This document shows positions 2,161 to 61,900 of a DNA stretch of 64,000 nucleotides, one piece after another. The position numbers and the translations under genes were made by a program. The stretch lies in the NCBI GenBank assembly GCA_964252035.1, contig OZ176213.1; one strand, given 5' to 3'. Below the pieces are notes generated by a model, which saw only the letters and a list, made by a program, of their open reading frames with translations, was not told where the DNA came from and did no database searches. Within the stretch, counting starts at the first letter, position 1. Each line of letters begins with the position of its first letter. Source of the DNA: Podarcis erhardii (taxonomy: Eukaryota).

Positions 2161-5100
2161 CACATGGTGATCTCAGAGGCTAACTTACTACAGTATTGCT
2201 TTTGAAGCAAATCAATCCTTCTCTGCAGCAAAAGGGTGTTTGTCCCCACGTAAATGTCGGGGCAGCAGAAGCAAACGCTGTTTGGGTTTTTTTTGCATAA
2301 AATTGATTGTAAAAAAAAAAAAGAGGCCTCAAAGCGGTTTACAAAAAAAGAAAGATAAACCAGTGAAATTATTAAGAAAAATTAACCATGATTTTAAGTT
2401 TTTGAAAAGTTAAAATAACAGTTTAGACTGAAACAGATTAAAGGCTTGCATCAAGTTTCTAAGCATCGGAGTATGCTTGACTAGACAGTGTTTTTAGCAG
2501 GCACCAAAAGGTTTATGTGTTATGAACGGAAAAAAAAAAAAAAAACTTATGAAAAGAGTACAGTGAAGGTGCCTCCCACACTAACAGTTTGAGTTCTTAC
2601 AAAGGTGTTATTATGTGGCACCTGAAACAGTACCAATTCCGCTGATTGCTTCAGCACATATGGGTTTGTTGCTGTGTTCATGATGGTGCATTGATAAAAG
2701 AAGAAGAAGAGTTTGGATTTGATATCCCGCCTTTCACTCCCTTTAAGGAGTCTCAAAGCGGCTAACATTCTCCTTTCCCTTCCTCCCCCACAACAAACAC
2801 TCTGTGGGGTGAGTGGGGCTGAGAGACTTGAGATAAGCGTGACTGGCCCAAGGTCACCCAGCAGATGCATATGACCTCAGTATTATCATCGTTAGGTCTC
2901 ACCAACCTTTTTTGGCCCTTTAGCACCTTTGCAAATCAGAGGAATTGTCTTGGATACTCCTCCCACCCTGCATTGCAACTAAGGACACACCACACAAACT
3001 ATCCTGTTGGTTCTTTAAAACCTCATTTTAGGAGAGGGGGCTGGAGACACATCAGCAAAAGCCTCTGTTGGCAACTCTTGAATGTGGAAGTAGTTGTAAA
3101 GCATGGATTGTGCCGCCACCCCCCCCCCCATTACTGCCCAGTTTCACTTGAATCAACCACTTCTCTGGCTCAGCATACCATTTTGCAACAGCCCCACCTG
3201 CTGTGAGGCTTTGAACCTCCATGTAAAATGAGCTGTCAGAATCTACAGTTCCCCAGTTCACCTTCTGGTCCCTTCCTACTTCTGTTGATAAGAAATTGAG
3301 TTGCTTGTAATTTTTCTTTGGATAAATAGGATGTATTACTATTCTTGTTAGAGAAATAGACAAAATTGTAAACCCCAGCAGATTATTATTGGTTTCACTC
3401 CCTAGAGTTTTTGTTTCATTGATTGTATGTTGGTTGTCTTTTTCAACTGTTGTGTTCTTCTAAGATTTTTGGTCATTTTTTGTGCAAGTGGACAGTAATG
3501 TAATTCAGTTAAGTAATTTATTTCTGAAAGGCACAGCATGCTTCAAATTTCAAAGAACAACAATTGGGGGTATGGCTCATGTATTAAGTATTGTTTTCCT
3601 AGCTTCACATGGGAGAGTGTGGAAGATGAGGACCTTCCAGTGGACAGTCTTAAACTGCTTGCTGTCAGTAAGACCCATGAACTTCTCGTATATGAAATTA
3701 ATCTAGAGGTTGGAAAATGTGATGCAACACTCTTGCAGAGCTGCAGTGAAGATACGCAGAAGCAGCTCATCAAACGTAAAAATATTAGTGAGTATAACAT
3801 TCATTCAAGATGTAAAATACTAGTTTATTAATTTGTTTATTGATTTGGAGGCCATTCTTCAGCAGTGTCTAGAAAACAAAATATGTTATATGGTATCTAT
3901 TGCAGACCTTAGCCCATGAGTTGCAACTTGCTCTAGACAGGTAATGCTTATAAACGTTGGTGGGGCTATTTCAAACATTGAATGCAGACGGCCTGACTTT
4001 TGCCACTTTTGGGATGGGTGACCTATTTATCTTTATTGGGACTGTGCTGTATCACTTGTTTCTCTGCACCTATTGTTACTGCATCTTAGAATATGAAAAT
4101 ATCCCTTTTGCCCTCGTCATGCAGGTTTATCTTCAATCACCTCTTTGAGAGTGCTGTCATTTAAAAATGGTAAAGCTTTGATGCTGCTCAACAACTGTAT
4201 TATTGCACAACTTGCTTTTCTTGGAGGCGAACTGAAAGCAGAAAAGTTGGAGGATTGCTTTCTTCTTGATCTGTCATCAGAAGCTCTGGAAAGGATAGTA
4301 GATGTTGCCTTTTGCAGAGGTGTTATTTTCTTGTTAGAGGAATCTGGGTGGATATGTATCCTTTTAAATTGAGTTTTAACATCCTGCCCTTCCTCCAGGA
4401 CAGAGTGGTTTGCAAAATAAATGTATAATATAAGCAGTAAAATAAAACACTAGCAGATAGTTCTCTGTGTTGCTCAGTAATTCTTAAGAAACAGACAAAT
4501 ACTGAGATACATAAATAGATATTTTTGTTGTTGTTTGTCTCTTAATAAATAAAGTGCTAGCCTTAATACAAACAGTCCAGGATCAAAACAGTCCAGAAAC
4601 AGTCCAGGATCAAAAAAGGTCAAAACCCATAAGATCACAAGGCAAGTCAGGATGCTAATGCAAGGATTTTGTTCAAGCACTCTGCCAGCAACTGGAGACT
4701 TTTAACCAGGAAGCTTCAGAGCTCCACCCAGAGCACAGCTGGAGGCCATCTGGATTGCCTGAGGCAGTGATTTTCAAACAGTGTGCCATGGCACCCTGGG
4801 GTGCCTTGAAGGATGGTCAGGAGTGCTGTGATGTCTTTGCCTCCCAGAGCCTTGCACAGCTGTTGTAGCAGCACTGGCTACAAGCTTCCCAGGCAAATTG
4901 TGCCTCTGGGGCTGGCCATGGGGAGCTGGTTGCCAGGGGCTGAGGCAACCTTGGAGTAAGCAAGCAAGTGGGCGAGGGAGCCCAGCCAGCCAGCCAGTCT
5001 TCCAGGCCTTGCTGATGGGAATGGACAGACAAGTCCTAGGCCCCTGTGGGGCAGTGGAAGGAGGCACCTCTTTTGGGGGTGGGGGGCAGCTCAGAGACCA

Positions 5101-8100
5101 TGGGCAGCAGGTTCAGCTCCCCAGAGGACTCCCAAGGAGAGGGGAGAGGAGAGGAGAGAAGAGGAGGCTGAGGGAACACTCCACAAGGCAGGGTGTTTGA
5201 AAAGGGGTGAGAGGTTGCCAGCTTTGTCGGCAAGGGGTGACATAGCTGGACTCCTGAGCCCCCATGGGTGCCGCAGAAAATGTAGTTAGTCAAGAGAGCC
5301 ATGGACTCAAAAAGGTTGAAAACCTCTGGCCTGAGAAGTTTGGTCTTCTCATGAGGAGGAGCTTCTTCACAAGTAACACTTTATTTTCAAGGAGTCCTTG
5401 TTCTTTGGGTGGGTGTACCTGTACCTTTATCCGCCAGCATGTCACCAGACTTGGTGCTAACTAAGCCTCTGCCTCTGATTCTTTGCAGGGGCCCTCTCTG
5501 TCTTGCAGAGAAGATTGGGATGCTCTGATACCTGAAGGTCCCAGATCCCCCTGCTCTGTCTCACTGTGCACTGACACAGCCTGTTTCTCTTTCATTCTTG
5601 TTTTGTGGAGCACCAAATCTTTCTGTGAAGAGGATTGTTCTAGCCATGTGCCTGACAGTTGCAATATCTTAAGAGGTGTCCAAATGCATGCAGTTTGGAA
5701 TGGTTCAGTCTACTATTTTGATTTGAAACAGTGCCCAGTAGTCTTGCACATTAGGTCTAAGTACACTTGCATAAGATTGCTGTGTCAGGATGGTGGGTTT
5801 TCCTTTGTATGTGTGCCTGTTCATGTGACTCAGAAAGTGTCTTTCCTTGACATTGTTGCAAAGATATTTTCGATGCTACGGATGGTGCCTACCTTGCCCA
5901 TGTTGATGTCTCCCTCTATCAAACAGAGGGGCAAGATGAGAAGCGTCTGGACATCCTGTCTTCTCTTACACTGTTAAATATATCCCATGATCTCAGTGTT
6001 GCTGTGGTTGCCAACAGCTCCAGTTGTGTCGTGGCTATTGACCTCCATGTATACTTCAAGTAGGTTCACCACAATATGCTATAAAGTGGTATTGGGCAGG
6101 CAGATTTTCACTTTTTAAATTCTTTGCCAGTTCTAGCTTTTCCTCTCTCGCTCTCTCTCCCGAAAAGTTTGATGGTCCTGCTCTCATGAAACATTTAGGA
6201 AAATGGTTAAAACTTTTTATTGTGCTGGGTGTTTGTGGTCTTAATCTCACTTTCTCCCCCTGCTGCTTAAATTGCTTTCAATGACTTTTTAATGCTCACT
6301 TTATTGTTATAATTTATTGTCAGTGAAAATTCAATTTTTTTTTAGATTAACTGTTATAGGGAACTTTTTGAGGGTTGAAAAGTGGAGTTGAAATCATCTT
6401 ATTTATAAATAAACACTTCCCCCCCGCAGAGAATATCCTGAGCATTTAATTTGCAAGAAAAACTTTGACAACCTTCCTGTAGAACAGTTGGAGGGGACAG
6501 ATGAGGATGACCTCAGAAGTTCAGATTACAGCATGAAACTTATGCAGCATCCATTTCGGACTGACAGGTATGTCTATAGAACTTCTGCCTTGCATCATTA
6601 ATCTATGTGGAAAAGAGGGATATGTTTGTTCAGTCCTACTTTCCACTTTAGCTCTCTGGTTCCTGCTGTTACTGCTGATACTGCTGGTAAAACAGCTTTA
6701 GAACGTTAGGATGAATTAGTATAAGCTTAGACATGTGGCATCATTTCCAAATAGATGCACTAGTATGTCTAAACACCGTCCTCCCCAGGACTAGTTTGCA
6801 GTTGTTTTGATGGCAAGAAACTATTTATACTTATCCAATCTGTTTATCTGTATTAAAAATCCTTTTCATTCAAGCAATACAACTATAGATAATTCATAGA
6901 TTCATTGTTGAAAATGTTGGTGTGATTTTTCTCCTTTTTCCAGATCCTGGAAGGCACATTTGTCTTCATTGTTTGACACAACAAAAGGATCTAATTCTTC
7001 AAATTTGGCAGCCAACGTTTTCCTGCCTTGGTGTCAGTATCCTTTGCATCTAGAGCACTGTGACTGTAAGACTCGTGAAGCTTCTGAGGCCTCCTTTCTG
7101 CATGATGCTGCTCATGTTCTTTCAAACTCAAGAAGAAAAGATCCCCAAAACACAGGCAAAAGAGACAGACTATGGAAGAGCATAGATTTAGGAGGACTAG
7201 AAGATGGTGTTAAACTCGAGTGTAAATCTGTGACAGGATTTAGTGCATTGTTCACTCTCTCAAGTGAGAGTGAAGGACTGATTCTTCTTCTGTGGGATTT
7301 GGAGACCCAAGACGTGATGCGTTCTTGTGTGGGCAAAAATTCATTTTTTGTGGAGTGTAACAGAGAAGAGCAGTTATGTCCCATCCTTTCAGGTGAGCAT
7401 CTTTTAGTTGCAAATAAAAACCAAAGCCTGCAGTCTAGAAAACAGAAGCATTTATTTGTTTGTAAGTACTGACACCATTGAGGGTGATGCAAGAAGATTG
7501 CATTCAGTCTCATAAAGTACCATATAGATCATGTTTGATATGACAGGTGAATAAGTTCTTCTTTTATTTATTATAACCCTTAGAGCCCGGCCTCTCCTTG
7601 GTTCTGTTTGGCTTGACTCAAGAGGAATTCTTGAATAGACTGATCATCCATGGAAGTGCTGGCACTGTAGATTCTCTTTGCCAGCTCAATGGATGGGGAA
7701 GATGCTCTATTCCCATACATGCCTTGGAGGTAAAGAAACACTTGTGGCCCTTGAGGTTCTGTGCCTCCCACATCTCCCAGTGCTGGAAGTGGTGGGATCT
7801 TGCAACTGGCAGGGGATTCTTTTTTCTTTTTCTTTTTGACAGCCTCAAATGTTTACTTTGAGCTTATCTAACCTGCAGCCTTTGCAGGCTACGTGGAAAG
7901 GGCACCTCCCAAAGTAATATACAGAGCTGCTGCCATGTGGATAAATTGTGGAGCATGACAAAACTGACTGCTCTTGATGACTCTGTCCTCCAGCCCTAGT
8001 TTTTTATTCTGCTGCAGTATTTGTGGCATGAGGTGATCCTTCTTTTCCTGATTTGTGCTGCACATCCTATCTAGGAAAGTCCTCCTCTCACAAAAAGACA

Positions 8101-16444: not shown

Positions 16445-19400
16445 TGTGAATTTCTTCTCTTTGCCATCTGCCTTTGGAGCCTATTCTTGGGCAGAAAGAC
16501 AGGGTATAATAATGGAAAACAAGGCAACAGTTTTTTCTTTCTTTCCTCCCTCCAGATGCAAATAAGATTTTCCAAGCTAGCCTGGCAAATGCCCAGATCT
16601 TGATTCCCAGCAACCAGGCCAGTGTGAGCACAATGCTGTTGGAAGGCCGAACGCTCCTTGCTCTTGCCACCACAATGTACACCCCTGGAGGTATTGATCA
16701 GGTATGCTATAGAATATTGGGAGGCTGTTGATGACCTTTTCCTTTCAAAGTGACAGAAAATGTCAAGAAGATCTTAAATGCCAGCAGCCTCAGAAAATTT
16801 GGGTCGTGTTCTTTCTCTGAAGGTGCAGATAAAGCCTTGTGCCAGGTGCTGTGGCTTGTGCCAATGAACTGTTCGGTTCCCATTTCCTTGCAAGTGTATT
16901 CAGGTTCTTCTTCTTCTTCATTGTAGGTCCTTCAGAATGGAGATGGAGGAGAGAAAGTAGATGCCCAGCTCTTCAGGATGGCCCTTGCTCCTTATCCCAA
17001 GCTGAGAGCAGCCCTCTTCCCCCAGTATAACAGTCATGGGACCTTGCCTTCCGACATTTCTCTCTACCACCTTGTCCAGGTATAAATATATACCTATCTG
17101 CCCCCAATACAAATAGAATCATAGAATTGTAGGGTTGGAAGGCACCCCAAGGGTTATCCAGTCCAACCCCCTGCAATGCAGGAAACTCATCCAACCTCTG
17201 CTGAAAACCCTCCAAGGAAGGAGGTTTATCACTTTTCAGCCTTCTCTTCCAGGCTAAACGTACACAACTGCTTCAACTGTTCCTCATAAGACTTGGTTTG
17301 TAGACCCTTTATCATGTTAGTGGCCCTCCTCTGCCCATGTTCCAGCTTGTCCATATCCTTCTTAAACTGTGGTGCCCAGGTGGGGTTTGAGCAAGGCAGA
17401 ATAGAGTGGAACTATTACTTCCCTTGATATGGGCGCTGTAATGCTATAGTCCAGTTATAGCAGCTGCCACTTTACCCAAACTTACACCAGTGAGACTTGA
17501 AAAAGGGCTGTAATGGGAAAGTGGGGCACAGGTTTGAGTTCCTCTCCTGCAAAATGCTGAAGGTGACCTCTGCAAGGCATTGCCTCTTCATTCTGGGTAT
17601 TCTGCAAGCAGTGTTAATTTGGGATTGGATAGGGAGAGGCTGCAACCTCCAGCTTCAGAGAGCAGCTCCCTAACCACACAGTCACAGGAGCAGGTAGGAA
17701 AAAAGCCACATGACAGCCTGTGTGGATGTCCTGGGGGCTTAGCCTATGGCACACCTCCTTCCAACGTACAGGGGCCCAGAGCTCCCAGCAGTGTACACTA
17801 GAACACATAATTATATTTGCATGTCGGCTTTCCATAGTTAAAGCCATGCTCAAGGCTGCTTGTAACATTAAAAATGACACATATTTGCAAATGTAAGTAG
17901 TCATAAACTGTAAATAAAACAGCAAGTAGTGCACAACCAAATTAAACAATTTCCACATAAATCATAATAAGATCTAAAATAAAGGCACAAAACAATTAAT
18001 AGAAACAAGAACAACTACCCTGCCCCCAACTACACCCCAACTTAAGAATCTGTTCAGCAGCCTCAGCTTTTGTAGCTGGAGTCAGTCCTCCCAAGTCAAG
18101 TGGAAAAAGCCTTGCAAGGCAGGGAGCAGTACTGCCGGGACATGGCTCCCATACCACCACCCTTTGGCGCCACTTCTCCCCATCTTAGCCACAGCTACAT
18201 AGCAATAGCCCTGACTTGCACAAGTGGAAGGGCACCTGCCTCTCCCACCATCACTTACCACAAGAGCATTTCATGGAGCTGCTGCGTCTTGTTGGATGCT
18301 TAAGCAGGGGTCAGCAAACTTTTTCAGCAGAGGGCCGGTCCACTGTCCGTCATACCTTGTGGGGGGCTGGACTATATTTTCGAAATAAAAATAAAAATGA
18401 ACGAATTTGTGTGCCCCACAGATAACCCAGAGATGCATTTTAAATAAAAGCACACATTCTACTCATATAAAAAGACACTGATTCCCGGACTGTCTGCGGG
18501 CTGGATTTAGAAGGTGATTGGGCCAGATCCGGCCCCTGGGCCCTAGTTTGCCTACCCATGTTTAAGAGTGAAATGCCCTTTTGCCTCGCCCTCTGTGGAT
18601 AATTTTCTCCTCAGCTTGGTTTCACTTGACACAGATATTTTAAAATATTAAGTGGCTTAAATATGCTTTTGAATAAATAAAATCCTCTGGAGCTGCACTC
18701 TGCTCTGTGGAGTGTATGTATATAAGACTGGGTTTGAATTTGATGTGACTGTTTCATTCCAGAATATCTGGGTCAATGTGTGACAGCAGCTGTACTACAT
18801 GTGTAAGATGCTGCACAAGATGTGTGCTCAGTTGAGCAGCTTGGGTTAACATGTTTGCTGCATTTTAAGCAGGCCTTGAAATTAATGTTGTGTTCTAATT
18901 TTTCAGGCGTTAGTTCCATTTGATCCTACAAAATTGTTTGGCTGGCAGTCAGCAAATACGCTTGTCATACCTGGTAGGTAACTTTTGCCGTATCTTGTTA
19001 CTATTTAAAGTGAATATAAAGTATACGTGTGTGGAATCTCCCAGTATTTCATTCTGTTAAATAGACATTTCTCTGGGAGCTGACAAGATGCTGAGAGGTT
19101 TGCCTTCCAGCAGAATCTTCTTTGCTCTCCCTGTTGCATCTGATCTTTCAAAAGGTGAAATAGAGCCCTAGAATTAGGCAAGCTTGTATTCTTGCCTCCT
19201 AGCTGTTTATCTTGAATCTAAATGATGTCCCAGACTGCCACTCTCCTAAAGTTGGCAACAAGAAAATTTCTGTATTGTCTTTTTGCCAGTTATTAAGACT
19301 TGATCTTAAGTGGTTTTTGGCCATGTTGTCTTGCTCCTGTAATTTAAATTGTTTACAGATTACTATTTTTTTTAAAAAAAAAGTTTATTCAGTGTGGCTA

Positions 19401-22400
19401 TTGGACAGACAAATTCTTGAAAAATAGTTCTCCTTCCCTTGGAGCTCCCTTTCATCAATCCACTTCTTGGCTCTCACACACAAACTTTACGCTGTCCAGA
19501 AAGCCACTGCAAGTCAGACAATGGTCCTGTGGTTCTTCTGTATCAGAGGAGGCCAGCCTGTTCCAGCAGCAGTGAAATGTTTACCATTCCAAAGTCTCAG
19601 TCCAAATTCTTTACGGGTTTGCACTCTGGATCAGATGCAGCCACTGCTTTGGAAACTGGCCCCACAGATTTTAGGGCATGGTTGGCTGCTTAAAAACTTT
19701 AGCTCTGTATCCACATTTACTAAAGTGTCTCTGGCTCCAAGTGACAGCTGTAATAGTACATGGCTGAAAATGGGACTCTCTTAGAATACCTGCAGCAGCA
19801 CTGGACTGTGCCCCTCTTTTCTTGAAGCCAAGTTCAGTTGCACAACAAATTAATCAAACCAAATCCTGGAATAGAATGTTTTCAAGAGCTCTTGGTTCAT
19901 ACAAATAAATTTTTCTCTGCACTTTTTAAAATTCTCGATGGAAAATGTATCCAATTTATCAATTATTTGTGTTTACAAGATGCGACTTGTGTTTCACTTC
20001 TCTCACCCTGGATGTTCTGCATTCCCAAGTTTTATTTAGAAGGTTTGTTGACAGTTTGGTGGTCTTGAGAGAGTGAAGGTCTAATGGAAGCGAAAATGTT
20101 GGGTCAAGTCCTCCCTTCTTGCCATTTTTATTCTGGAATTTGAAACCAACTAGTTGTCCTCCTTCTGGCCACTACTGGTTAGGTCAGTAAGTTTTTATAC
20201 AAGTGGTTCGATGAGCAGATAAAACTCCTGGGGTTTCACTGGCAGAGAAAATCAGAAAGCAGCTGGTTAAAAGACAGCATAATTCTCCTTGTGGGTTTTG
20301 TTTTGTTTAATGGGTTGTGTGCTCTTCTATATAGTAATTGTGTTCATATCTGTGATGTATCTAGTTTTGGATTATAGAGTGCAATAATAAATCAAGATAC
20401 TTTAGGCCATTGGGACTTGCTTTTAGAAACCAGTGCAGTTCCCCTCAGAAGTTGTTGGCAGTGGTGTGGCTTTTTCAGCTGTAGCTGTTAGAAGGGCATG
20501 TGGAGGCTGTGTGGGAAAATAGCCCCCACCCCAGTCTGCTTCCATTGGCAGCTGGACAGCTGTAACTCTGTTGCTCTTCCAGTGTTGGGACCCTGTGGAG
20601 GCTCTGGGGTAGTCTTTGCCAGCTTGGCCTAATTTGGCTGGTGTTGATGGGAGTTGTAGTCAAAAACATCTGGAGAGTGCTAGTTTGGCAAGGCTTCCTC
20701 TTTCAGTGGTCGAAAGTGTCCATCCCCAAGGCTATAATGGCTGTCGCTGGTGTTTCAACTGTAATCCCATGTGGTGCTCTGGCACTCAGGTCCTGTGTTG
20801 GGGCTTCTGTTTGGCCATTGTGAGAACAGGATGCTGGTTTAGACAGACCTTTGAGCCTGATCCAACAGGCTCTTAAGTTTTTATGGAGATTGCTGAGATT
20901 GTCAGTTACTTCCTGGTGTAGACACTGAGCAGCAAAGCTTCCTACCAGAAACTTTTCCTGCGCCAGCCCCATTGAAACCCACAACACTTATGCATGAAAG
21001 GACAGAGCTGCCTTTTTGTAGCTCTTTCAGTGGACTGACCCAAGAGAAGTGCCTGTGGCCAGGTGCGAGGCCAAGTTTCAAGGAGTCAACCAGAAGAATT
21101 GTGTCTGGCACGTGGGCCTGTGGAGCCTGCTATTTTTCTGTCTACTCACCACGTTGTTCTCCCTTCTCTTTAGATACCTGTAGTGACCTTCCTCACTTCT
21201 CAAGTGCCCCTTTTGTCAACAAATATGCTGTAATCGAACGTCTGGATTTCTCCTACTTCTTGCGTCATGAACGCCCCTCATTTGCTTTTGGGACTTTTTT
21301 AGTCCAACAGCTGGCGAAGAGCAAAACTCCAAAGCAGCTGTGAGTATTTGAAAACAGCAGAGATGTGGAAAGGAGCCTCTCATGTTCTCGACAGAACATT
21401 TTCTATGGAGAAATCTTTGTATTGCAATCAGGTATTGTGTTGCTTTAGATAGATGTAAGCTGCTTTGTAAGAAGGGGTATTTATTTATATAAAGTACTTT
21501 TCAGATTTGGGACCCCAGGTTTTTCCTGACCTGCTTACAGTCCCCTTGGCTTTGATTTTGACTGTGTGCAGAGTTGGGTCCTTTCCTTGCAACCTCTCTG
21601 CTGTTCCAGATGCATGATGCTAACGGCTGCTGCCTTTTCTTCCCTAGGATCCAGCAAGCAGGCAATGATGCCTACTCCTTGGCCCTCTCCTTCTTTTATG
21701 TGCCGTCTGTGGCTTCTGCCTGCACCTGCTTTTTGGAACTGCTGGGCCTTGATAGCCTCAAACTCCGGGTGGATGTTAAAGCTGCCAATGTGATCTTGAG
21801 CTTCATGTCTCGAAGAGAGGAGCCTCAGCATAACTCAATCAGGCAGTCCTTGGGTAGCGTTTCTTCCACATGTTTTCTATATTGGAGAAAATATTTGATG
21901 GGTGCACAAGAGCAGAAAGCCCCCTGCCCTTTTGTTCCTGAATGGAAAGTCCACAGTTAGAACTGTTATATTTATTTAATCAGTTTGTAGACTGTTTGAT
22001 GTTTTAAAAATTCCAAGTGATTTACAAAGTAGACACCATAAAATAACAAGGTTAGAATACCAGCAAAACAAAAATACAAAATGTTGATAAAAGCGCCAAA
22101 ATGCTAAACCCAAGGTAGATAACCTATTGGGGGGGGGAATATAACTTTGAAGTATTCTGCAGCCACGGACTTCCGGGTTAGCGCGAACGGCTAATGGCGG
22201 ATTCCCTCCGAGCTCCGGAGGGAATCGGCTCTGCTGAGGACGGGTCTTGCCGTGCCGGCGACACGGGGACCCTCAGAAACCGCAGGCGCGGAAGCCTGCG
22301 GACTTGGTGACTCGGTGGGCACCTTAAGCGCCCTCCCCGACCCACGAAGAGCCTTTTTAAAGGCTGCGGAGAGGGTACGGAGAGTGGCGTGGTGCTGAGA

Positions 22401-24960
22401 GTAGACCGCTACCTCAGTAGAGCGAAGCCGCAAGCCATGGCCGGAGAGCGCTGACTTTCTTCCCAAAATTTGGACTGGATAACAAAGGACCCGTGAGTAG
22501 TGGAATTTGGACTTTAAAAATTTTATCCTGTGAATTCGGCACGATCGGGGGATGTGTTAAAGGGAAGTCCGCACCCCCTCTACTTATAGACGTTTCAAAG
22601 CAAGGAACGGAGAATTAAGGCGGAATGAATACTGTTTTGATGATTTAAAAGTTTCTCACAAATTTGATAGAACAAGATTTTTGTGCTGGAGAGAAAGGGA
22701 ATTTGGAACTTTGTGTGTATCCCCCCCAAAAAACCCGGGAGTGTCCTATTTGGGTCCCGGAGGAAGAAGTGAAAGGAGTTTGACAGCTGTCAAAGAAGCT
22801 GTCAAACGGGCGGACAAAGTAAAGAATTTTGCTATTTAATAACTCTTGGAATTAAAGCTGATACATTTGGACTGAGGCGATTGGAAACAAAGTATTGATA
22901 ATAACAAAGTAACAGATTATTGGAAAAGGACTACTAAATAACTGAAAGCCCCCTAGGGGGAATTAGTGACATTACAATGGCTGCAGAAGGAAAATTACTG
23001 GCGGAGATAGAAAAAATGTTCTTTCTCGTGGGAATCCTGCAGGAGCAGAGTATGGCTCTGAGTAAAGTTTTTATGACCTTGAATCCTGAAACAAACAACT
23101 CTGCTGAATGCACAAAGGAGATGTATGATAAAAATTCTGCAGCTGAGCAGGAAGAGATGCCTTTGGAATTGACAGAGAAAAAAGAAGGAGTTCAGACACT
23201 ACAAGTGGAAAATATCAACCAGGAATCTGCAGCGTTAGAGTATGAGCAAGAAGACCTCTGGATTACAGACCTGCGAAAGATGAGAAAGAAGAAGAGAGAA
23301 GCCCCTGGAGTACTTGGAATATTAAAACTAGAAAGAACAAAGCAATATGATTGGGACTTTTCTCTTGAGTATGGAAAACTAGATGGTCTTTCGCAGCAAA
23401 CACTCTTCAACATTCTGAATGAAAGAAAATATGATCTGACTCTGACTGAACTCCTTCGGGGTCTTAGGACCATCAAAGAGGACTACCAATATAGCTGGCA
23501 GAGAGGGACTGACAGAGAATCAGACGCCTCGGACGTGAGGAATCCGGGCTAGAAATATTTTTTGTTTGTTTTCTGGACATTTGTCTAGGAAGGGACAGAA
23601 ACCGGGGCAGGGGGGGGAGAGAATAGAATTATAAAATGTTATGTTTTGTTTTACTTGGTCAATGTGACCTATAATTAATATAATAAAGGGAAAATTTGTG
23701 AAGGGGAAGTTAGATCGACCTTAAAAAAAAAAGAAATTAATGATTATAAGAGAATTGGATAGTTGAATATAGATAAACAAAAGAATTTAATTTTTAAAAG
23801 CAATGTGAATATCTTTAAGAGGTTAGGTAAGAACTTGCTGAATTAATTCTGGAATTGGGATGTAAGAGGAGGGGGTGGGGGGAAGTCAATGAAAGTGGGT
23901 AAAGAAACTTAGGGTATGTAATTGTATTTGTGTGTTTGTTTGTCTTTGTCTTTGTGTGTGTGTCTGTTGTTATAAAATGTAAAAACCCAATAAAAATTAT
24001 TTAAAAAAAAAAAAAAAGTATTCTGCAGCCACATGAAGCTTTGCCTTTTCTGTTTGCAGTTGAAAAGCTGACTCAGCTGGCAGAGGGAGAAAAAACAGCA
24101 GCAGAAGAACTCCTTGTCTGCTTGGAGGAAGCCGTGTGGGATAAGATGGAGCACCAGGAGATAAGCAAGTGAGTCAGCCCTTTGAGCCCGTGGTGGGAAT
24201 TTGCTATACATTCTTTGTGGCCTTATATTACTTCTATGAAGACTTAAGGATTCAAATTTGGAAGGATTGATTTGATTTTTGAGTAGATTTGATTTGATTT
24301 ATTATATTTCTATGCCACTTTTCATTCAAGTGAATCTCAAAGCGGCTTACAAACAATAAATAACAATAACATAATAGAACATCACAAATACAGCTTAAGG
24401 TTGAAGTGTGATGTATAGAACAAAAAAAGGAGGAAAACAAGTATAGCTTGCATGCTGTCTCCACCCCCTTTACTTTTTAGCCTGGAATCCCTGCTAGCTG
24501 CATATTAGCAAAGAGAGATTCCCCTTCCAAATGCTGTTTCTGTGTTTCAGTTTCCTGTATCTCCACATTCACTTGAGTCACAGGGGATGGAGAGGGGTAG
24601 TTAAGAACATCAAAGCAAGGAGGGGCAGAGAAGAGTGTAAGAAGCAAAGGGCCCAATTAATCCAGTGCTGTTTCCAGATACCTCTGAGGCACGAGAGCAG
24701 TGGTACTCTCCCACCCATAGCAGCTGCCATTCATAGGCATGCCCTCTCTGACACTGGAGGTAGTAATAGCTCGCTGTCATAACCAGTAGCCTTTGATAGC
24801 CTTGTTCCCCATGAATGCTGACCCCTTTCAAAGCAACCCAGATTCATGGCCATTCTTGCAGTGTCTTTCCTTTTGTTTGTCTCTACTCTTCCACCATTTA
24901 TCTTGATTGGATGACCCAAGTGTGGTCTAGTATGATGTGTTCATTTTCTGCACACCATGC

Positions 24961-46073: not shown

Positions 46074-46530
46074 TATCATAGAACTGCAGGGAGTTGCAGT
46101 GGCGTAGCGTGGGTTGTCAGCACCCGGGGCAAGGCAAGTAATTTGCGCCCCCTAACCCTGGATTTGCGCCCCCTAACCCTATCCCTAACCCCCAGATGTT
46201 GCGCCCAGTGCGGCCGGCCCCCCCCCCTGCACCCCCACGCTACGCCACTGGGGAGTTGGAAGGGACCCCAAGAGTCATCTAGTCCAACCCCGCGCAATAC
46301 AAGAATCACAGCTAAAGAATTCCTGACAACCGCTACTTAAAACCCCCCATCAAGGTGAGGCCACCACTTTCTGAGGAAGTCCGTTCCACTGTTCCAACAG
46401 TTCTTACGCTCAGAAAGCTCCTCCTAATGTTTAGTCACAATCTCCTTTCTTGTCATTTGAATTCATTGGTTTGGGTCCCCCACTCTAGAGCAGCAGAAAA
46501 CAAGTTTGCTCAATATTCCATGAGACAGCC
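46074..46530 (-). mobile_element. CR1 LINE 3' fragment interrupted by a MITE
   Basis: atcatagaactgcagggagttg [MITE] gggagttggaagggaccccaagagtcatctagtccaacc...gttccactgttccaacagttcttac...ctcctcctaatgtttag. Confidence 0.75.
46097..46250. mobile_element. hAT-type MITE with CCCTAA motifs
   Basis: 17-bp perfect TIR cagtggcgtagcgtggg / cccacgctacgccactg; perfect 8-bp TSD gggagttg (46089-46096, 46251-46258). Confidence 0.9.
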
Positions 46531-52922: not shown

Positions 52923-55900
52923 CTAAAAAGAAGCAAGGAAGGAAAAACCAGTAACTTCCATGTCTCACATGCAAGAAACAGCGCTCCACTTGTAAATGCA
53001 CAGTAGTTCTCCACCACAGCAGAAGAAAATATGACAACAGAGATTCTAATTTTCAACTGCTCACCTGCAGTTTTCCACAATTCCCTTTTACTCAAATGTT
53101 ATGCCTAAACCTACTTCTATGCAGAATTTCCAAGTACACCGACTTCTTGCATGCATGTAAAATCCAGCGAATGATTTTGCTGTTGTTCCTCTCCAACCCA
53201 ATTCCAGAGACTCAAGGCAGCTCCACTAATCTAGCCATCCTCTGCAAAATTCCACATTGCTTGGCCTCCTGAAAGCGTTCATCCTTGAGCTTTGGCAGAC
53301 TTTACATTTACTAATGCAGAAGCTATAGCAGGAGCGGGGAACCGCCAACCCATGTGCCAAATTGGAACCTGTGCTGGGCCACATTAAGCCAGGCAGGCTA
53401 GAGGTTCCCCGCCTCTGATCTAGCTTCTTTTTCCCAAACCACATCAACCTGCCCCACACCTAATGAGACATGCAGCATCAGGTGTGGGGCAGGTGCACGA
53501 AGTGCCAAACCTTAGAAGTGCGCGCCTGATTGCTGCCACCACCAATTGGTGAATGGGCACTTAAAAAGCTAAAGGTAAAGGGACCCCTGACCATTAGGTC
53601 CAGTTGTGGCCGACTCTGGGGTTGTGGCGCTCATCTCACTTTACTGGCTGAGGGAGCTGGCGTACAGCTTCCAGGTCATGTGGCCAGCATGACTAAGCTG
53701 CTTCTGGCGAACCAGAGCAGCGCACGGAAACGCCATTTACTGTCCCGCCGGAGCGGCACCTATTTATCTACCTGCACTTTGACGTGCTTTCGAACTGCTA
53801 GGTTGGCAGGAGCAGGGACCAAGCAACAGGAGCTCACCCCATCGCGGGGATTTGAACCGCCGACCTTCTGATCGGCAAGTCCTAGGCTCTGTGGTTTAAC
53901 CCACAGCACCACCCACGTCCCTCTGAATGGGCACTTAGAGCAAGCCAAATGAAATTGGGTGCGCTACTAAGTTCCCCATGGGGAATTCCATAGTGCAGCC
54001 AACCCCACAAGAAAGCAGAAGTCAATGACTATCAGCTGACATATGCTAACTTCAAGCACCATGGGACTTGTTGTACTACTGAGCTCCCCAAACTGAACTC
54101 CACAGGGAGTTGAAGGGGCTTGCAAAGAGCAGAGGAAAAGCTCCTTACAGGCAGCCCTGCTAAGTGTTTTGAAGTGCCCGTGATCAGCTGATCAGTGGTG
54201 CTGAAATCACTGTGCAGAAATATTTGCAAACCCTGCATGATGATCTGGAATCCCAAACAATGTTTTTTTAGGGAAGGCTTTTTACATCAACATCAGCATC
54301 CTGAATTATGCCCAGAAAGCAACACAGGGCCACTACACTTGTAATGCTATCAGGTTTTAAGAGGAAAAATTCTATCAAAAGATTAATCACTGAAATACAT
54401 ACCATTTCTACAAGTTTCTCCAGAAAAGGAATCAATTTTAGGAGCTCATTGTCATTTTTATCCATGAACCAGCTCTCTATAGGAATTCCATTTGAAAGCT
54501 AGAAAAAGCAAAATATCAGAGGCAATTTTAATTATTTATATATTTTTATTTAAATTTCTAAACCCACCCTTCATTCAGCTCACAAGGCATATTATAATTA
54601 AATACATGCAATTAAACAGGCCAACACCAGACATATGGTCAATTGACAAGAATTTCTGAAGCGAGTTCAGGCAAGTAGCAATGCCATCTTACTGTGAGTT
54701 TCATTTTTGGCAATTCCCCTATGAGCCCAACAGTCCCCAAATATGAAAAGCTGTAAGGGTGGGAAAGAAGGCTGGGGAAAGCAGTTGGAAACTTCAGTGC
54801 ATTAAGTGCATCTTCCTTACTACAGATTGTAGCCACAATCAATACAATGCAACTTCTATTTCTGTCAACAGATCATATCAACAGTTTCCTCTCCATTCCA
54901 GAGATTTCATGCTTAATGCTGAAACATCCTGGCCCCTAATCCAGGAAGGCGTGTGAGGGCAAATCTCTTAACATGACCAAAACTAATACAGGATAAGGTC
55001 AACAGCAGTGTCCTAACTCTGATTCAACCACATAATTTTACATAAGCACACTTTTTCAGTATTTATCATGAAATATTGTGGTCGCAAACTGCCCTTCAAA
55101 TTGTAACGTACCGTATATGTTTTGTGGTGAATTAGGTACTTGCCCCCACATGCATAAACAAAAATCATGCTTTTTTACTTGCTGAGGCTACAGATGAAGT
55201 TACGTTAGCATTTGTTTTGTCTGCAAAGCCAGCTGCGGAGAAAAAACACTCACCTGATAGGCAAAGGCTTGTGGTGAATTGTCAATAATAATAGTTTTTG
55301 AGAGATCTCTACCAAGGATATTTAAATCCTTTATGTAGTTTCCTTGTACACAAACACAATGCTCACGGAAAAGTCGATGCCTGTATTTGGTTAAAAGAAC
55401 ACATTCAGATTACATGGAGAAAAATGTATATGAAGCAAATGCTGTTTTTTACAAGATTTCCTCTCTTTCATGGGATTTAATGTTAAGAATTGTCTTTTTA
55501 TTAAATGGTAGTTTTTTGGTGTGTGTGGTGTTATATCTATTTGAAAAATAGATGTTAAAAACACAGCTAAAGGTTGCTTTTTCTTGGCTGAAAAATAGGT
55601 TTTTAATTCTCTGCAGTACAATATATTTACCATATCTATCACGCAAAACCAAACAAGGCCTTGTGTTCTTAATGATTAATTTGACCAGGAGGTGGAGCAC
55701 CTGTGCTGTTAACTATGGAAGAAAATCAGGCAATGATGAAGTGTTTTTACAATGATCCCATAACATTTGGAGAGAACCCAAAGACAGCCAAGCCTCAACT
55801 GCCATCTTTCACGCACAAGTCCACCAGGAGAATTCAGTTGTTCTTCTTATGTTGTTATAGTTTTCATGTTTGAGCCTAATTTATTTGTATTGATTTAATT

Positions 55901-58900: not shown

Positions 58901-61900
58901 GGTGAGCAAGGGCAGTACTACTGTGGCCAAACTATCCCTCCTGACATAAGTGTGTACAGCCTTAGCTGTACTCTGTAGCTTCCACAAGAATGTTCCTCAG
59001 CAAAGATCCCCATTTAAAGCAGGGATGTGCCACCATTTAGCTCACAAAGGACACATGTGGGTGGTTAGCGGCTGCATGCCTGTGGGCAAGGCTGGTGCTG
59101 GCTGGGCCTGTAGAAAAGGAGAGCTGAATGAAGTGCACCCCGGGGCCCAAGGGTGCCTTCATTATGTATCTTAGGCGCCAGGCAAACACATTCTCCTTCT
59201 CCCAGGCCTTTGGCTAATTAAACAATCTATGGCCTTTAAAATTATATGGGGTGGGAGGTATTGCTTTAGTTTGTTACTATGTTACGTATTTTTGTGCTTT
59301 TATATTGTAAATCACCCTGTGGTCCTTAGATGAAGCTAAAAAGCAACCATTGCAGCAAATTGGGCTCAATAAATGGAAGAGATACAGCAGCAGATCCTTT
59401 GCTGTTCATCTGCTTTGGTGCCTGGGGCAAGTTATGGTGGGAAGGGCCACCTGTTTTGTATGCAGAAGGTCCCAGGTTCAATCCCCAACATCTCCAGGTA
59501 CAGCTGGGAGAGAAAATACTGAGTTCAGCAGACGAACTGTCTAAGTCCAAGTCAGCTTCCTATGTTCTGGTGTTCCCAAGTTATCCCCAGGCGCCTTCCT
59601 CCCTATGTAAACAGCATGCCCCAGTCTGGCAGACAGCTCTTTAGCAGGGTATGGGAAGAGTGACTGTGATGTGGAGGAAGGGATAACTCTCCCTGAATAC
59701 CTTCCAGTCCATCCAAATTGTGCTCCCTCAGGTGGGTGGGGGATGAAATTCAGCAGTGAGGGTGGATTGAGTGCCTGTGGTGAGTCACACTGAAGAGCAT
59801 GAGAAGGTTGCTCTCTAGTGAACTAAAGAGAAGTCTTATTCACTGATTAACAATCCCTTCATCAGAACCTCTGCAAGTGCCAATACAAGTTATTAGTACC
59901 CAAGTGTGTACTGAGTACTGACTCATAGAATCACAGAGTTGGAAGGGACCCCCAAGTGCCATCTAGTCCAACCCCTGGCAATGCAGGAATTGGTTTCCAT
60001 CCAGAAGAATAAACAATATTTGGCTGCAAAGTGGACAAAGTTCTTGGGTTCACATTATTTCCAGTTGGTGTCAATAATTTAAGACAAGCTATGAATATGC
60101 CTCTGTCTAAGGGAAAAGCACAAATGCTAAAGGAGTGAGCAAGGCCTTTAAAAAAACCTCAACTCTAGACAGTTGCTATATTTTAGGATACTTAATTCTA
60201 TAGTATCTTTCAGTGCCCAACTTGCTTTACAACTCTCATTTGCCTTCAAAACCACACTGAGAAACAAATTAAGCAGATCACCACTTCCAAAGGACCACAT
60301 GACAGAGAATTTAAACCCCATACTGCCTTCTTGAATCAGTACTGTCACAACAGGCCTTTGCAATCGACAGAAGATGATCATTAAAAAGGGTGGGGAGAGC
60401 AAAAGAGTGAACTTGCATGGTCTCAGTCATTCTTTGCACAGTTAAGGAACTACTTGAACCTTCCTTCCTATTATTATTAAATTTTTAGTCACCAACTCCA
60501 AAGCCTCCTGATGACTTACAATAAAATAGTTTAAAACATCAAATAAGCAAATACAACCTGTAAGATAAATACAGCATAACCAAGTTTTTAACAAAGCAAC
60601 AAACTAATAACAAAATCCACTCCTCAAGTATGGGCACAACCCCCATTAAAATTAAAAAAATCGAGCTACCCTGGCACATAGCATTAAGGGCACCAACTGA
60701 GAAGAAGATAGTAAACTGCCTGGGAGGAAAGACAGGTATTTGCCTGCTGCCACAAAGTCTGGTGCCAGGGGAGCATCTCTGGAGAAAGCACCCCAGAAAT
60801 GGGGGACAACCACAAAAAAAGTCTCTCTTGTTGCCATTCTGATTTTCAGCAAGATCTTGGAGGAAGTCTTCTGGATGACCAAAGGGCCCAGATAAGCACA
60901 AGCTTGGCTGCAGTAACAGACCACATCACTACAACACTTGATCATCATTGTGAACATTTGCACCAAATTAGTTCTAAATAAATTATGTAGCAAATAAAGA
61001 GGACTCTGGTCCACAAAAGGCTTTTGATTGTTTTTGCCTTTTGGAGTTTGACTGAATAATGGTTTTTCAGAGACTAACAATAATATTATGAAGCTGACAC
61101 TTCACACTTCCTTGCCATTTTCACTGGGCCCATATCAAAATAGAAGAAATGACACTCAAGCGTAATAGGGGCAAACTCTGTTTATCTATAGCCATAGATG
61201 GCCGTGACTGCAATTTCAAGCATACTTGGAAACTGGTTTCCCCTCAAAGCAATGAAATGTACTTCCATATGTGAGCATTTGGCTTGGGAGGCAAAATGCT
61301 TAAGGGTTAGGACCAGGTCTGGAACATTTACAGCTGCAATTCTTAACCTGCTTACTCTGGAGGAGCTTTTTATGAGACTGGCAGTGGAATAAGTGGATAG
61401 AGGATTACAAAGGTTGAGGTACAGAGGTCACTAAACTCCTAACTAAATGTCCAAGTTTGCAAAAATCAAGTTTTATGGTGCTAGCCCTGTGCTAGGCAGA
61501 AAAGGACTGCCAAGAAACCAATCACTCAGTCAATCATTTTATTTGTATGCCGCCTTTCCAAATATAAAACTATGCTCAAGGCAGCTTACAACATATTAAA
61601 AAATTGCATAACTACTAATGTAGCAAAAGTAGTTATAAACACTAAACAAAATATCAAAACTATTGAACACTTTCCACATAATTTTTAGGATTTTTATTTT
61701 GGATTTTACAATTTAACAGCAACAGCAACAACAACCCCACCCCAAACAACACCCCCTAAACAATAGCCCAGCCCATGAACCAAGGAGGGGTTTGTAAAAT
61801 TGGAACTTTACATTTATTCCACCCAAGACTCAAATGTGTTGTTGCTCACTTCAGCAATATTTATATAAAGAAACCTCATAAAGTAGTGTTTACTTCTCAG

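What the first reader, a model, noticed from the sequence alone, without database searches (positions are those of the whole stretch)
22150..24032. Complete 1.85-kb RT-less retroposon carrying one intact ORF (half-L1-like element)
Seen: perfect 17-bp TSD, an L1-endonuclease-like target (TTTG/AA), an untruncated 5' end (GGACTTCCGGG), an 810-nt leader, one A-rich 191-codon ORF, a roughly 450-nt 3' region with a G-rich tract, AATAAA and poly(A). No ORF2, endonuclease or RT remnant is visible. Knowledge: this is the signature of target-primed reverse transcription by L1-clade machinery; ORF1-only HAL1 elements are known in mammals. Inference: a young, non-autonomous, protein-coding retroposon family that parasitises lizard L1. 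Identical TSDs and retained CpGs suggest a recent insertion.
Basis: partly seen in the sequence, partly recalled or inferred. Interest (0 to 1): 0.78.

Follow-up and report, generated by a model that had tools for sequence, protein, structure and literature searches.

The report
Young protein-coding lizard retroposon copy
This is a recently inserted, complete copy of a very abundant 1.85-kb lizard "jumping gene" that has no copying enzyme of its own, so it must borrow one (most likely from LINE-1). It carries one small conserved protein gene that shows no detectable likeness to the usual LINE-1 proteins.

Summary
An exact 17-bp target-site duplication (22150-22166 and 24016-24032) brackets a 1849-bp insert with a CpG-rich 5' end, an 810-nt leader, one 191-codon ORF, AATAAA and A15.

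Contigs of a sister species (organism B, two samples) run straight across the site without the insert, so it is a recent insertion with exactly these ends.

In the source species, summed contig depth over the element is about 2,500-6,000 times that of the flanks. About 2,100 contigs are at least 99% alike. This is a high-copy, young family, not a processed pseudogene.

The ORF belongs to a small protein family of about 170-215 aa. Its N-terminal helix and its C-terminal ASD[VL]R.PG-stop are invariant. The proteins are mostly acidic, and the only public annotation is one "hypothetical protein" in Podarcis lilfordi. Pfam and a profile search of 1.84 billion proteins link it to neither L1 ORF1p nor ORF2p.

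It therefore works like a mammalian half-L1 (HAL1), but I could not show that it derives from L1. L1 as the helper is inferred from the poly(A) tail and the duplication.

This scan had already noted what look like copies of the same roughly 1.9-kb family on other DNA of this genome.

The copy lies sense-oriented in a short SPG11 intron, 44 nt from the 3' splice site.

The parts
22150..22166 (+). 5' copy of the 17-bp target-site duplication AAGTATTCTGCAGCCAC
   Evidence: Exact, and only two occurrences in the window. The flank contig of organism B ends its first aligned piece at 22166.
22167..22470 (+). CpG-rich, strongly folded 5' module, presumed internal pol II promoter plus structured RNA leader. 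It starts GGACTTCCGGG, with an ETS-type core CCGGAAGT on the minus strand at 22169-22176.
   Evidence: GC 63% and CpG o/e 0.97. RNA fold of 22167-22500 gives -166.5 kcal/mol, z = -6.6, with 0 of 100 shuffles as good. It is the most abundant part in organism B, about 1000-2000 x flank depth, so other families share it. Promoter function is inferred.
22194..22310 (+). Upstream ORF of 38 codons in the leader. Four more short uATG frames start at 22437, 22552, 22625 and 22640.
   Evidence: Their role is unknown.
22471..22976 (+). A-rich second part of the leader. Its last 27 nt (22950-22976) encode in frame PLGGISDIT, matching the N-terminal extension of relatives P0004-P0007.
   Evidence: tblastn of P0004-7 starts at element position 778-784.
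22977..23552 (+). Single intact ORF of 191 aa. The protein is acidic and predicted mostly helical or disordered, with a conserved N-terminal helix and an invariant C-terminal ASDVRNPG-stop.
23553..23988 (+). 3' untranslated region with two G-rich tracts (23604-23617, 23871-23882) and a TG-rich stretch (about 23918-23972)
23989..23994 (+). Polyadenylation signal AATAAA, 9 nt before the A run
24003..24015 (+). Poly(A) tail. The run is 15 A to 24017; its last two A may belong to the duplication.
24016..24032 (+). 3' copy of the target-site duplication
21610..21853 (+). Host context: SPG11 (spatacsin) exon upstream of the insert
   Evidence: Translation matches spatacsin residues 1230-1296, E = 1.2e-22.
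24060..24168 (+). Host context: the next SPG11 exon. Its 3' splice site lies 44 nt after the insertion point.
   Evidence: Translation matches spatacsin residues 1299-1333, E = 4.7e-07.

Best explanation
A full-length, recently inserted copy of a high-copy, non-autonomous, protein-coding poly(A) retroposon family of lacertid lizards.

Shown:
- The 1849-bp unit was inserted as one piece, with a 17-bp target-site duplication and a poly(A) tail, after the source species split from a sister species.
- Thousands of copy-equivalents, many at least 99% alike, exist in the source species.
- The unit encodes no endonuclease or reverse transcriptase.
- Its one ORF belongs to a conserved protein family.

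Inferred:
- The CpG-rich, ETS-site-bearing 5' module is an internal pol II promoter, so each copy carries its promoter with it.
- The transcript is polyadenylated at AATAAA.
- The 191-aa protein is translated and helps the RNA enter or assemble a retrotransposition particle.
- A poly(A)-dependent LINE enzyme supplied in trans, most likely L1 ORF2p, nicks an A/T-rich site, primes on the poly(A) tail and copies the RNA into the genome.

Functionally it is the lizard counterpart of mammalian HAL1. Its protein, however, is not recognisably an L1 ORF1p.
For: - Duplication exact and unique.
- Poly(A), AATAAA, single ORF and composition as described.
- Empty site in organism B in two runs of two studies, with flanks about 4% diverged (records 9 and 24).
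- In run X1 the flanks are identical to the window and have word depth 82-112. The element has summed depth 250,000-650,000, roughly flat from 5' to 3'. Of 6,420 contigs laid, 2,111 are at least 99% alike.
- Protein relatives: 7 by word search and 10 true ones by the exhaustive profile search. All are 129-215 aa with the same architecture. Invariant residues are M1, G19, L21, Q22 and A184-S185-D186..P190-G191.
- In a substitution-only drift simulation, only 0.4% of ORFs stay open at 50% identity.
- No tRNA or other small-RNA head.
- No other copy in the window that could suggest a local duplication.
Against: - No L1 or other LINE sequence was available for comparison, so the helper is not identified.
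- The target site is only a loose match to the L1 consensus.
- No RNA run clearly holds the element, so transcription and translation are not shown.
- Summed contig depth is not a true copy number, as the tool itself warns.
- Protein databases hold only intact ORFs, which biases the argument for selection.
- The protein's function is unknown. The AlphaFold models are poor (pLDDT 45-46).
Confidence: 0.8

Rival explanations
1. True HAL1-type element. The family arose from a lizard L1 by loss of ORF2, and the 191-aa ORF is a shrunken, fast-evolving remnant of L1 ORF1 (for example its N-terminal coiled coil) that still co-assembles with L1 ORF1p/ORF2p.
For: - General anatomy matches: 5' promoter module, one ORF, G-rich 3' UTR, poly(A).
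- The N-terminal helix 2-39 is the only confidently modelled part, and it shows a 3-4 hydrophobic spacing at L8, I11, F15, V18, Q22, L29 and F32.
- Earlier notes of this scan (s1-220626, s1-224449, s1-254825) reached this reading on other copies, but they are leads only.
- Coiled-coil parts of ORF1p evolve too fast for sequence searches.
Against: - No hit to the L1 ORF1p families of Pfam in any of 15 members, even at E up to 1.
- No L1 ORF1p or ORF2p among the hits of a profile search of 1.84 billion proteins.
- The protein is acidic (pI 4.8; 13 of 15 members below pI 6.5) whereas ORF1p is a basic RNA chaperone (ORF1p property from general knowledge).
- No beta strands are predicted, so no RRM or CTD.
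- A trimer test of residues 1-45 gave no answer.
Confidence: 0.35
2. Processed pseudogene: a one-off L1-mediated retrocopy of a spliced host mRNA that happens to keep its reading frame.
For: - mRNA-like build: CpG-island-like 5' end with an ETS site at the start, long leader, one ORF, AATAAA, poly(A), duplication.
- The relatives sit on contigs of about 1 kb that could be transcripts.
Against: - Summed depth is thousands of times that of the single-copy flanks over the whole unit, and thousands of contigs are laid on it.
- No annotated vertebrate gene product is among the relatives except one 'hypothetical protein' fragment in Podarcis lilfordi.
- Other windows of this genome hold units of the same size (leads only).
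Confidence: 0.02
3. Same kind of element, but mobilised by a LINE clade other than L1, or derived from such a clade whose normal ORF1 is this roughly 200-aa protein. The relatives in the databases would then include ORF1s of autonomous elements.
For: - The protein is unlike L1 ORF1p.
- The family is deep: 25-30% identity between its extremes.
- The target site is only loosely L1-like.
Against: - From general knowledge of vertebrate LINE clades, a pure poly(A) tail after AATAAA plus a 17-bp duplication is typical of L1. It is not typical of CR1, L2 or RTE/Bov-B, which end in short repeats.
- Database contigs that hold the relatives are 0.9-1.9 kb, which fits short elements.
- Depth in organism A falls to flank level at both ends of the 1.85-kb unit.
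Confidence: 0.1

Closest known systems
Mammalian HAL1 ('half-L1') non-autonomous elements (Smit 1999; Bao and Jurka 2010, as cited in PMC5753468)
   Same: Multi-copy poly(A) retroposon with duplications. It has its own 5' promoter region, one maintained ORF and no ORF2, and depends on an autonomous LINE. Kojima's review states that HAL1 encodes only ORF1p and arose several times independently.
   Different: The HAL1 ORF is recognisably L1 ORF1. Here the ORF has no detectable similarity to L1 ORF1p, is half its size and is acidic. L1 ancestry of the ends could not be tested. The host is a lacertid lizard, and I found no published lizard HAL1.
L1-mobilised non-coding retroposons and processed pseudogenes (SVA, retrocopies)
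   Same: Trans-mobilisation of a pol II, polyadenylated RNA. Duplications of about 15 bp, poly(A) tail and mostly full-length copies.
   Different: Those do not carry a family-specific, conserved protein gene. Processed pseudogenes are one-off copies, whereas this is a family of thousands.
Other 'half-L1' and non-coding L1-derived retroposons noted by this scan in the same genome (s1-220626, s1-224437, s1-263172, s1-224440 and others)
   Same: Same unit size (1881-1902 letters with the duplication) and the same description: single ORF, no RT. A folded 5' module of about 335 nt was also reported for a non-coding 1.63-kb family.
   Different: Sequence identity with those copies could not be checked here, because the look-up by sequence was blank. 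Those follow-ups call the ORF a shrunken ORF1, which my searches do not support at the sequence level.

Membership tests
LINE-mobilised (target-primed reverse transcription) poly(A) retroposon | Target-site duplication flanking the insert | tested here: met
   17/17 identical and unique in the window.
LINE-mobilised (target-primed reverse transcription) poly(A) retroposon | 3' poly(A) tail preceded by a polyadenylation signal | tested here: met
   AATAAA at 23989 and A15 at 24003-24017.
LINE-mobilised (target-primed reverse transcription) poly(A) retroposon | Precise empty site in a related genome | tested here: met
   Organism B contigs join 22166 to 24038 with 12 letters between, in two runs.
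LINE-mobilised (target-primed reverse transcription) poly(A) retroposon | L1 endonuclease target TT|AAAA on the sense strand | tested here: inconclusive
   The site reads TTTG|AAGTAT, with 3 of 6 consensus positions.
HAL1 (half-L1) | Multi-copy family lacking ORF2 (no EN, no RT) | tested here: met
   1.85-kb unit with one ORF. Summed depth is about 2,500-6,000 x flanks, flat along the unit.
HAL1 (half-L1) | The ORF is homologous to L1 ORF1p (coiled coil + RRM + CTD) | tested here: not met
   No Pfam hit in 15 members. The profile search of 1.84e9 proteins finds no ORF1p. pI is 4.8. No strands are predicted. A fast-evolving coiled-coil remnant cannot be excluded.
HAL1 (half-L1) | 5' and 3' ends derived from an autonomous L1 of the same genome | not testable with these tools
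Processed pseudogene | Single or few copies derived from an intron-bearing host gene | tested here: not met
   Thousands of copy-equivalents. No host-gene relatives.
SINE | Head derived from a small pol III RNA (tRNA, 7SL, 5S); length under about 600 bp | tested here: not met
   No Rfam or tRNA match. The unit is 1849 bp with an ORF.
2A-like 'stop-go' peptide | Motif D[VI]ExNPG followed by P | tested here: not met
   The C-terminus is SDVRNPG followed by a stop. It has one residue fewer between DV and NPG, and relatives have DPG or SPG.

The most novel reading that the evidence does not exclude
The 191-aa protein is a new type of retroposon-encoded factor, unrelated to ORF1p. It is an acidic helical adaptor whose invariant N-terminal helix and invariant C-terminal ASD[VL]R.PG-stop let the parasite's RNA capture the LINE reverse transcriptase. 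It could do this by docking on the L1 particle, or by holding the ribosome and RNA at termination. That would explain how an RT-less element reached thousands of mostly full-length copies in one lacertid lineage within about 4% sequence divergence.
Probability: 0.15. Interest if true: 0.8.

Novelty: new variant of a known kind. Interest (0 to 1): 0.5.

Why it matters
Non-autonomous elements that keep a protein gene of their own are rare. Mammalian HAL1 is the textbook case, and its protein is plainly ORF1p.

Here a lizard family of thousands of young copies maintains a small acidic protein with no detectable link to LINE proteins. If that protein is needed for mobilisation, it offers a direct way to ask what, beyond a poly(A) tail, lets an RNA hijack a LINE reverse transcriptase.

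The family also looks active or recently active and lineage-specific. It is therefore a useful marker system for lacertid phylogeny and population genetics, and a source of insertions inside genes. This copy sits 44 nt from an SPG11 splice site.

Tried and rejected
- Processed-pseudogene reading: rejected on copy number.
- Pfam on the ORF and on all 15 family members: nothing recurrent.
- Profile of the family against PDB sequences: only chance-level hits, E = 1.
- ESM Atlas: no usable hit.
- AlphaFold2 with 8 and with 15 sequences: pLDDT 46 and 45. Only the N-terminal helix is confident, so no fold search was run.
- Complex prediction on three copies of residues 1-45: no answer, neither support nor evidence against.
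- The search for related loci in metagenome and viral contigs: pattern matches only, no relative.
The DNA, species and context of the Logan relatives could therefore not be read, and no dN/dS could be computed.
- Search for L1 or other LINE remnants in the window to compare ends: none, by Pfam on the nine other longest ORFs and by RT-motif regex in six frames.
- BLAST of the element and its protein family against the rest of the window: only a (TG)n match.
- Rfam and ARAGORN for a small-RNA head: none.
- The bacterial promoter/terminator scan is irrelevant to a eukaryote and is ignored.
- 2A-like reading of the C-terminus: rejected, because spacing and N are not conserved.
- 'C-terminus is the tip of L1 ORF2': no ORF2p surfaced in the profile search. 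This is a weak negative, since a match of about 30 aa is near the detection limit.
- Literature searches found no description of such a lizard family. Bao and Jurka 2010 is not held.
- The search of earlier findings by sequence was blank, which means nothing.
Full report
**Observation**

The stretch 22150-24032 is as described.
- The 17-mer AAGTATTCTGCAGCCAC occurs exactly twice in the 64-kb window, at 22150-22166 and 24016-24032. Dinucleotide-preserving shuffles give 0.03 matches even when two mismatches are allowed.
- Between the copies lie 1849 bases that start GGACTTCCGGG.
- The first 304 nt have 63% G+C and CpG observed/expected 0.97, against 0.12-0.29 in the flanking kilobases.
- The 810-nt leader holds five short upstream ATG frames, the longest 38 codons at 22194.
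- One ORF runs 22977-23552 (191 aa). It is the only sense-strand ORF above 52 aa.
- The 3' region is 445 nt, with G-rich tracts at 23604-23617 and 23871-23882. AATAAA is at 23989 and a pure A15 run at 24003-24017.
- A 1.85-kb unit with this single ORF cannot encode an endonuclease or a reverse transcriptase.
On the sense strand the target is CTTTG|AAGTAT, whereas the L1 consensus on that strand is TT|AAAA. The site is A/T-rich and compatible with L1, but not diagnostic.

**Insertion and age**

I laid Logan contigs of four runs on window 21300-24700.
- Run X1 (organism A) has flank contigs identical to the window (0 differences over 838 and 285 nt). It is the source species, perhaps the source individual.
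- In organism B, one contig per run aligns to 21300-22166 and then resumes at 24038, with only 12 record letters between. These are X4 record 9 and X7 record 24, from different samples and studies.
- That is a precise empty site. The flanks differ by about 4% (36-37 substitutions in 867 nt).
- The insertion therefore happened after the split of A and B, and the inserted piece is exactly the one bounded by the duplication.
- The perfect duplication, the unbroken A15 and the retained CpGs agree with a young age.

**Family or one-off**

- In X1 the single-copy flanks have word depth 82-112. The summed depth of contigs laid on the element at 85% likeness or more is 250,000-650,000 in every bin from 22098 to 24035.
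- 6,420 contigs were laid. Of these, 2,111 are at least 99% alike and 2,119 are 95-99% alike.
- The tool warns that summed contig depth is not a copy number, so I read it only as an order of magnitude: thousands of copy-equivalents, many very young.
- The profile is roughly flat from 5' to 3' and drops to flank level at both ends. Most copies are therefore full length, and the unit does not continue into a longer element.
- This rules out a processed pseudogene and a one-off internal deletion.
- In organism B the pattern differs.
  - The first 350 nt or so reach about 1000-2000 times flank depth.
  - The region around the ORF start reaches 100-400 times.
  - The 3' half of the ORF and most of the 3' UTR are at 1-20 times.
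- The 5' module is therefore shared with other abundant families. The subfamily carrying this particular ORF and 3' UTR expanded in the lineage of organism A.
- No second copy or fragment lies in the window.
- This scan had already noted units of 1881-1902 letters with the same description in other windows of this genome (s1-220626, s1-224437, s1-263172). I treat those as leads that fit the depth result.

**The protein**

- The word search found seven relatives (39-51% identity, 188-214 aa), all from Logan assemblies on contigs of about 1 kb and without names.
- An exhaustive HMMER profile search of 1.84 billion representatives found only eleven proteins. Ten have the same architecture (129-215 aa). 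The eleventh is a false hit to a fibronectin-type repeat protein.
- The only publicly annotated member is a frameshifted 129-aa 'hypothetical predicted protein' of Podarcis lilfordi, CAI5779343.1.
- In the 15-sequence alignment A2, identity between extremes falls to 19-30%. M1, G19, L21, Q22 and the C-terminal A-S-D-[VL]-R-x-P-G-stop remain invariant. Both termini are conserved at 70-100%, against about 40% in the middle.
- In a substitution-only simulation of neutral drift of this ORF, 2.1%, 0.4% and 0.1% of copies stay stop-free at 70%, 50% and 40% amino-acid identity.
- Databases hold only open frames, which biases the sample. Even so, the pattern of conservation points to selection on the protein.
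- In-frame codons just upstream of the ATG (PLGGISDIT) match a 12-aa N-terminal extension present in P0004-P0007. This subfamily has lost an upstream start codon.

**Is it an L1 ORF1p?**

I could not show it.
- No Pfam family, including the L1 ORF1p families, matches any of the 15 members even at E up to 1.
- No L1 ORF1p or ORF2p appears in the profile search, although that library must contain very many of them.
- The family profile finds nothing in the PDB, and the ESM Atlas gives nothing.
- The protein is acidic: pI 4.8, net charge -10, and 13 of 15 members below pI 6.5. It has one basic patch, KMRKKKR, at 101-107. From general knowledge, L1 ORF1p is a basic nucleic-acid chaperone.
- AlphaFold2 models are poor (pLDDT 46 and 45). 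They show helices and disorder, no strands, and only helix 2-39 is confident.
- That helix has a 3-4 hydrophobic spacing, so a coiled-coil remnant of ORF1 remains possible. A trimer prediction gave no answer.
- The C-terminus resembles a 2A peptide at first sight, but it fails the motif. It has one residue too few, N is replaced by D or S in relatives, and a stop follows instead of proline.

**How it most likely works**

Shown: retroposition as one polyadenylated unit, recent activity, high copy number, lack of enzymes, and a conserved ORF.

Inferred:
- The 5' module is an internal pol II promoter. It is CpG-rich and carries an ETS-type CCGGAAGT core at +3 to +10. No tRNA or small-RNA head is present.
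- The same module is a structured RNA. The fold of 22167-22500 has z = -6.6.
- The RNA is polyadenylated at AATAAA and the ORF is translated.
- A LINE enzyme supplied in trans primes on the poly(A) tail. L1 is the most likely helper because poly(A) tails and duplications of about 15 bp are its signature among vertebrate LINE clades (general knowledge).
- No L1 sequence was at hand.

**Comparison and novelty**

The closest known kind is mammalian HAL1, a non-autonomous L1 derivative that encodes only ORF1p and arose several times (PMC5753468). This family works like HAL1, but it fails the one defining feature I could test, ORF1p homology. I could not test the other, L1-derived ends. Four literature searches found no description of such a family in lizards. 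I could not consult Repbase or Dfam. I rate it a new variant of a known kind, already seen several times by this scan in this genome.

**Host context**

The exon at 21610-21853 encodes spatacsin residues 1230-1297 (E = 1.2e-22). The exon at 24060-24168 encodes residues 1299-1333. The element therefore lies, in sense orientation, in an SPG11 intron. That intron is 2206 nt now and was about 340 nt before the insertion. The insertion point is 44 nt upstream of the 3' splice site, with AATAAA and the A run just upstream of the polypyrimidine tract. Whether this affects SPG11 RNA, or whether the insert is polymorphic, could not be tested.

Noticed in passing
window:21854-24059: The retroposon sits sense-oriented in a short SPG11 intron, about 340 nt before insertion and 2206 nt now. 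It lies 44 nt upstream of the 3' splice site, with its AATAAA and A15 next to the polypyrimidine tract. It may disturb splicing or cause premature polyadenylation, and it may be polymorphic.
   Followed up: partly
window:24264-24391: A short interspersed repeat in the next intron reaches about 400-500 times flank depth in both organism A and organism B. It is probably a SINE.
   Followed up: no
window:10691-10768, 17117-17194, 46238-46315, 59950-59990: A dispersed repeat of about 78 nt in four copies at 73-88% identity. It looks like a SINE core.
   Followed up: no
window:47670-47969 and 53570-53869: Two 300-nt direct repeats at 90% identity, 5.9 kb apart.
   Followed up: no
window:22098-22440 versus 23124-23807, in organism B runs: In the sister species the element's first 350 nt or so are about 1000-2000 times flank depth, while the ORF's 3' half is near single-copy level. 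The 5' module appears to be a shared cassette used by several retroposon families.
   Followed up: partly
P0013 (CAI5779343.1, Podarcis lilfordi): The only publicly annotated relative of the ORF is a 129-aa 'hypothetical predicted protein' with a frameshifted C-terminus. Gene annotation has otherwise missed this protein family.
   Followed up: no
window (whole): The window holds 304 N.
   Followed up: no
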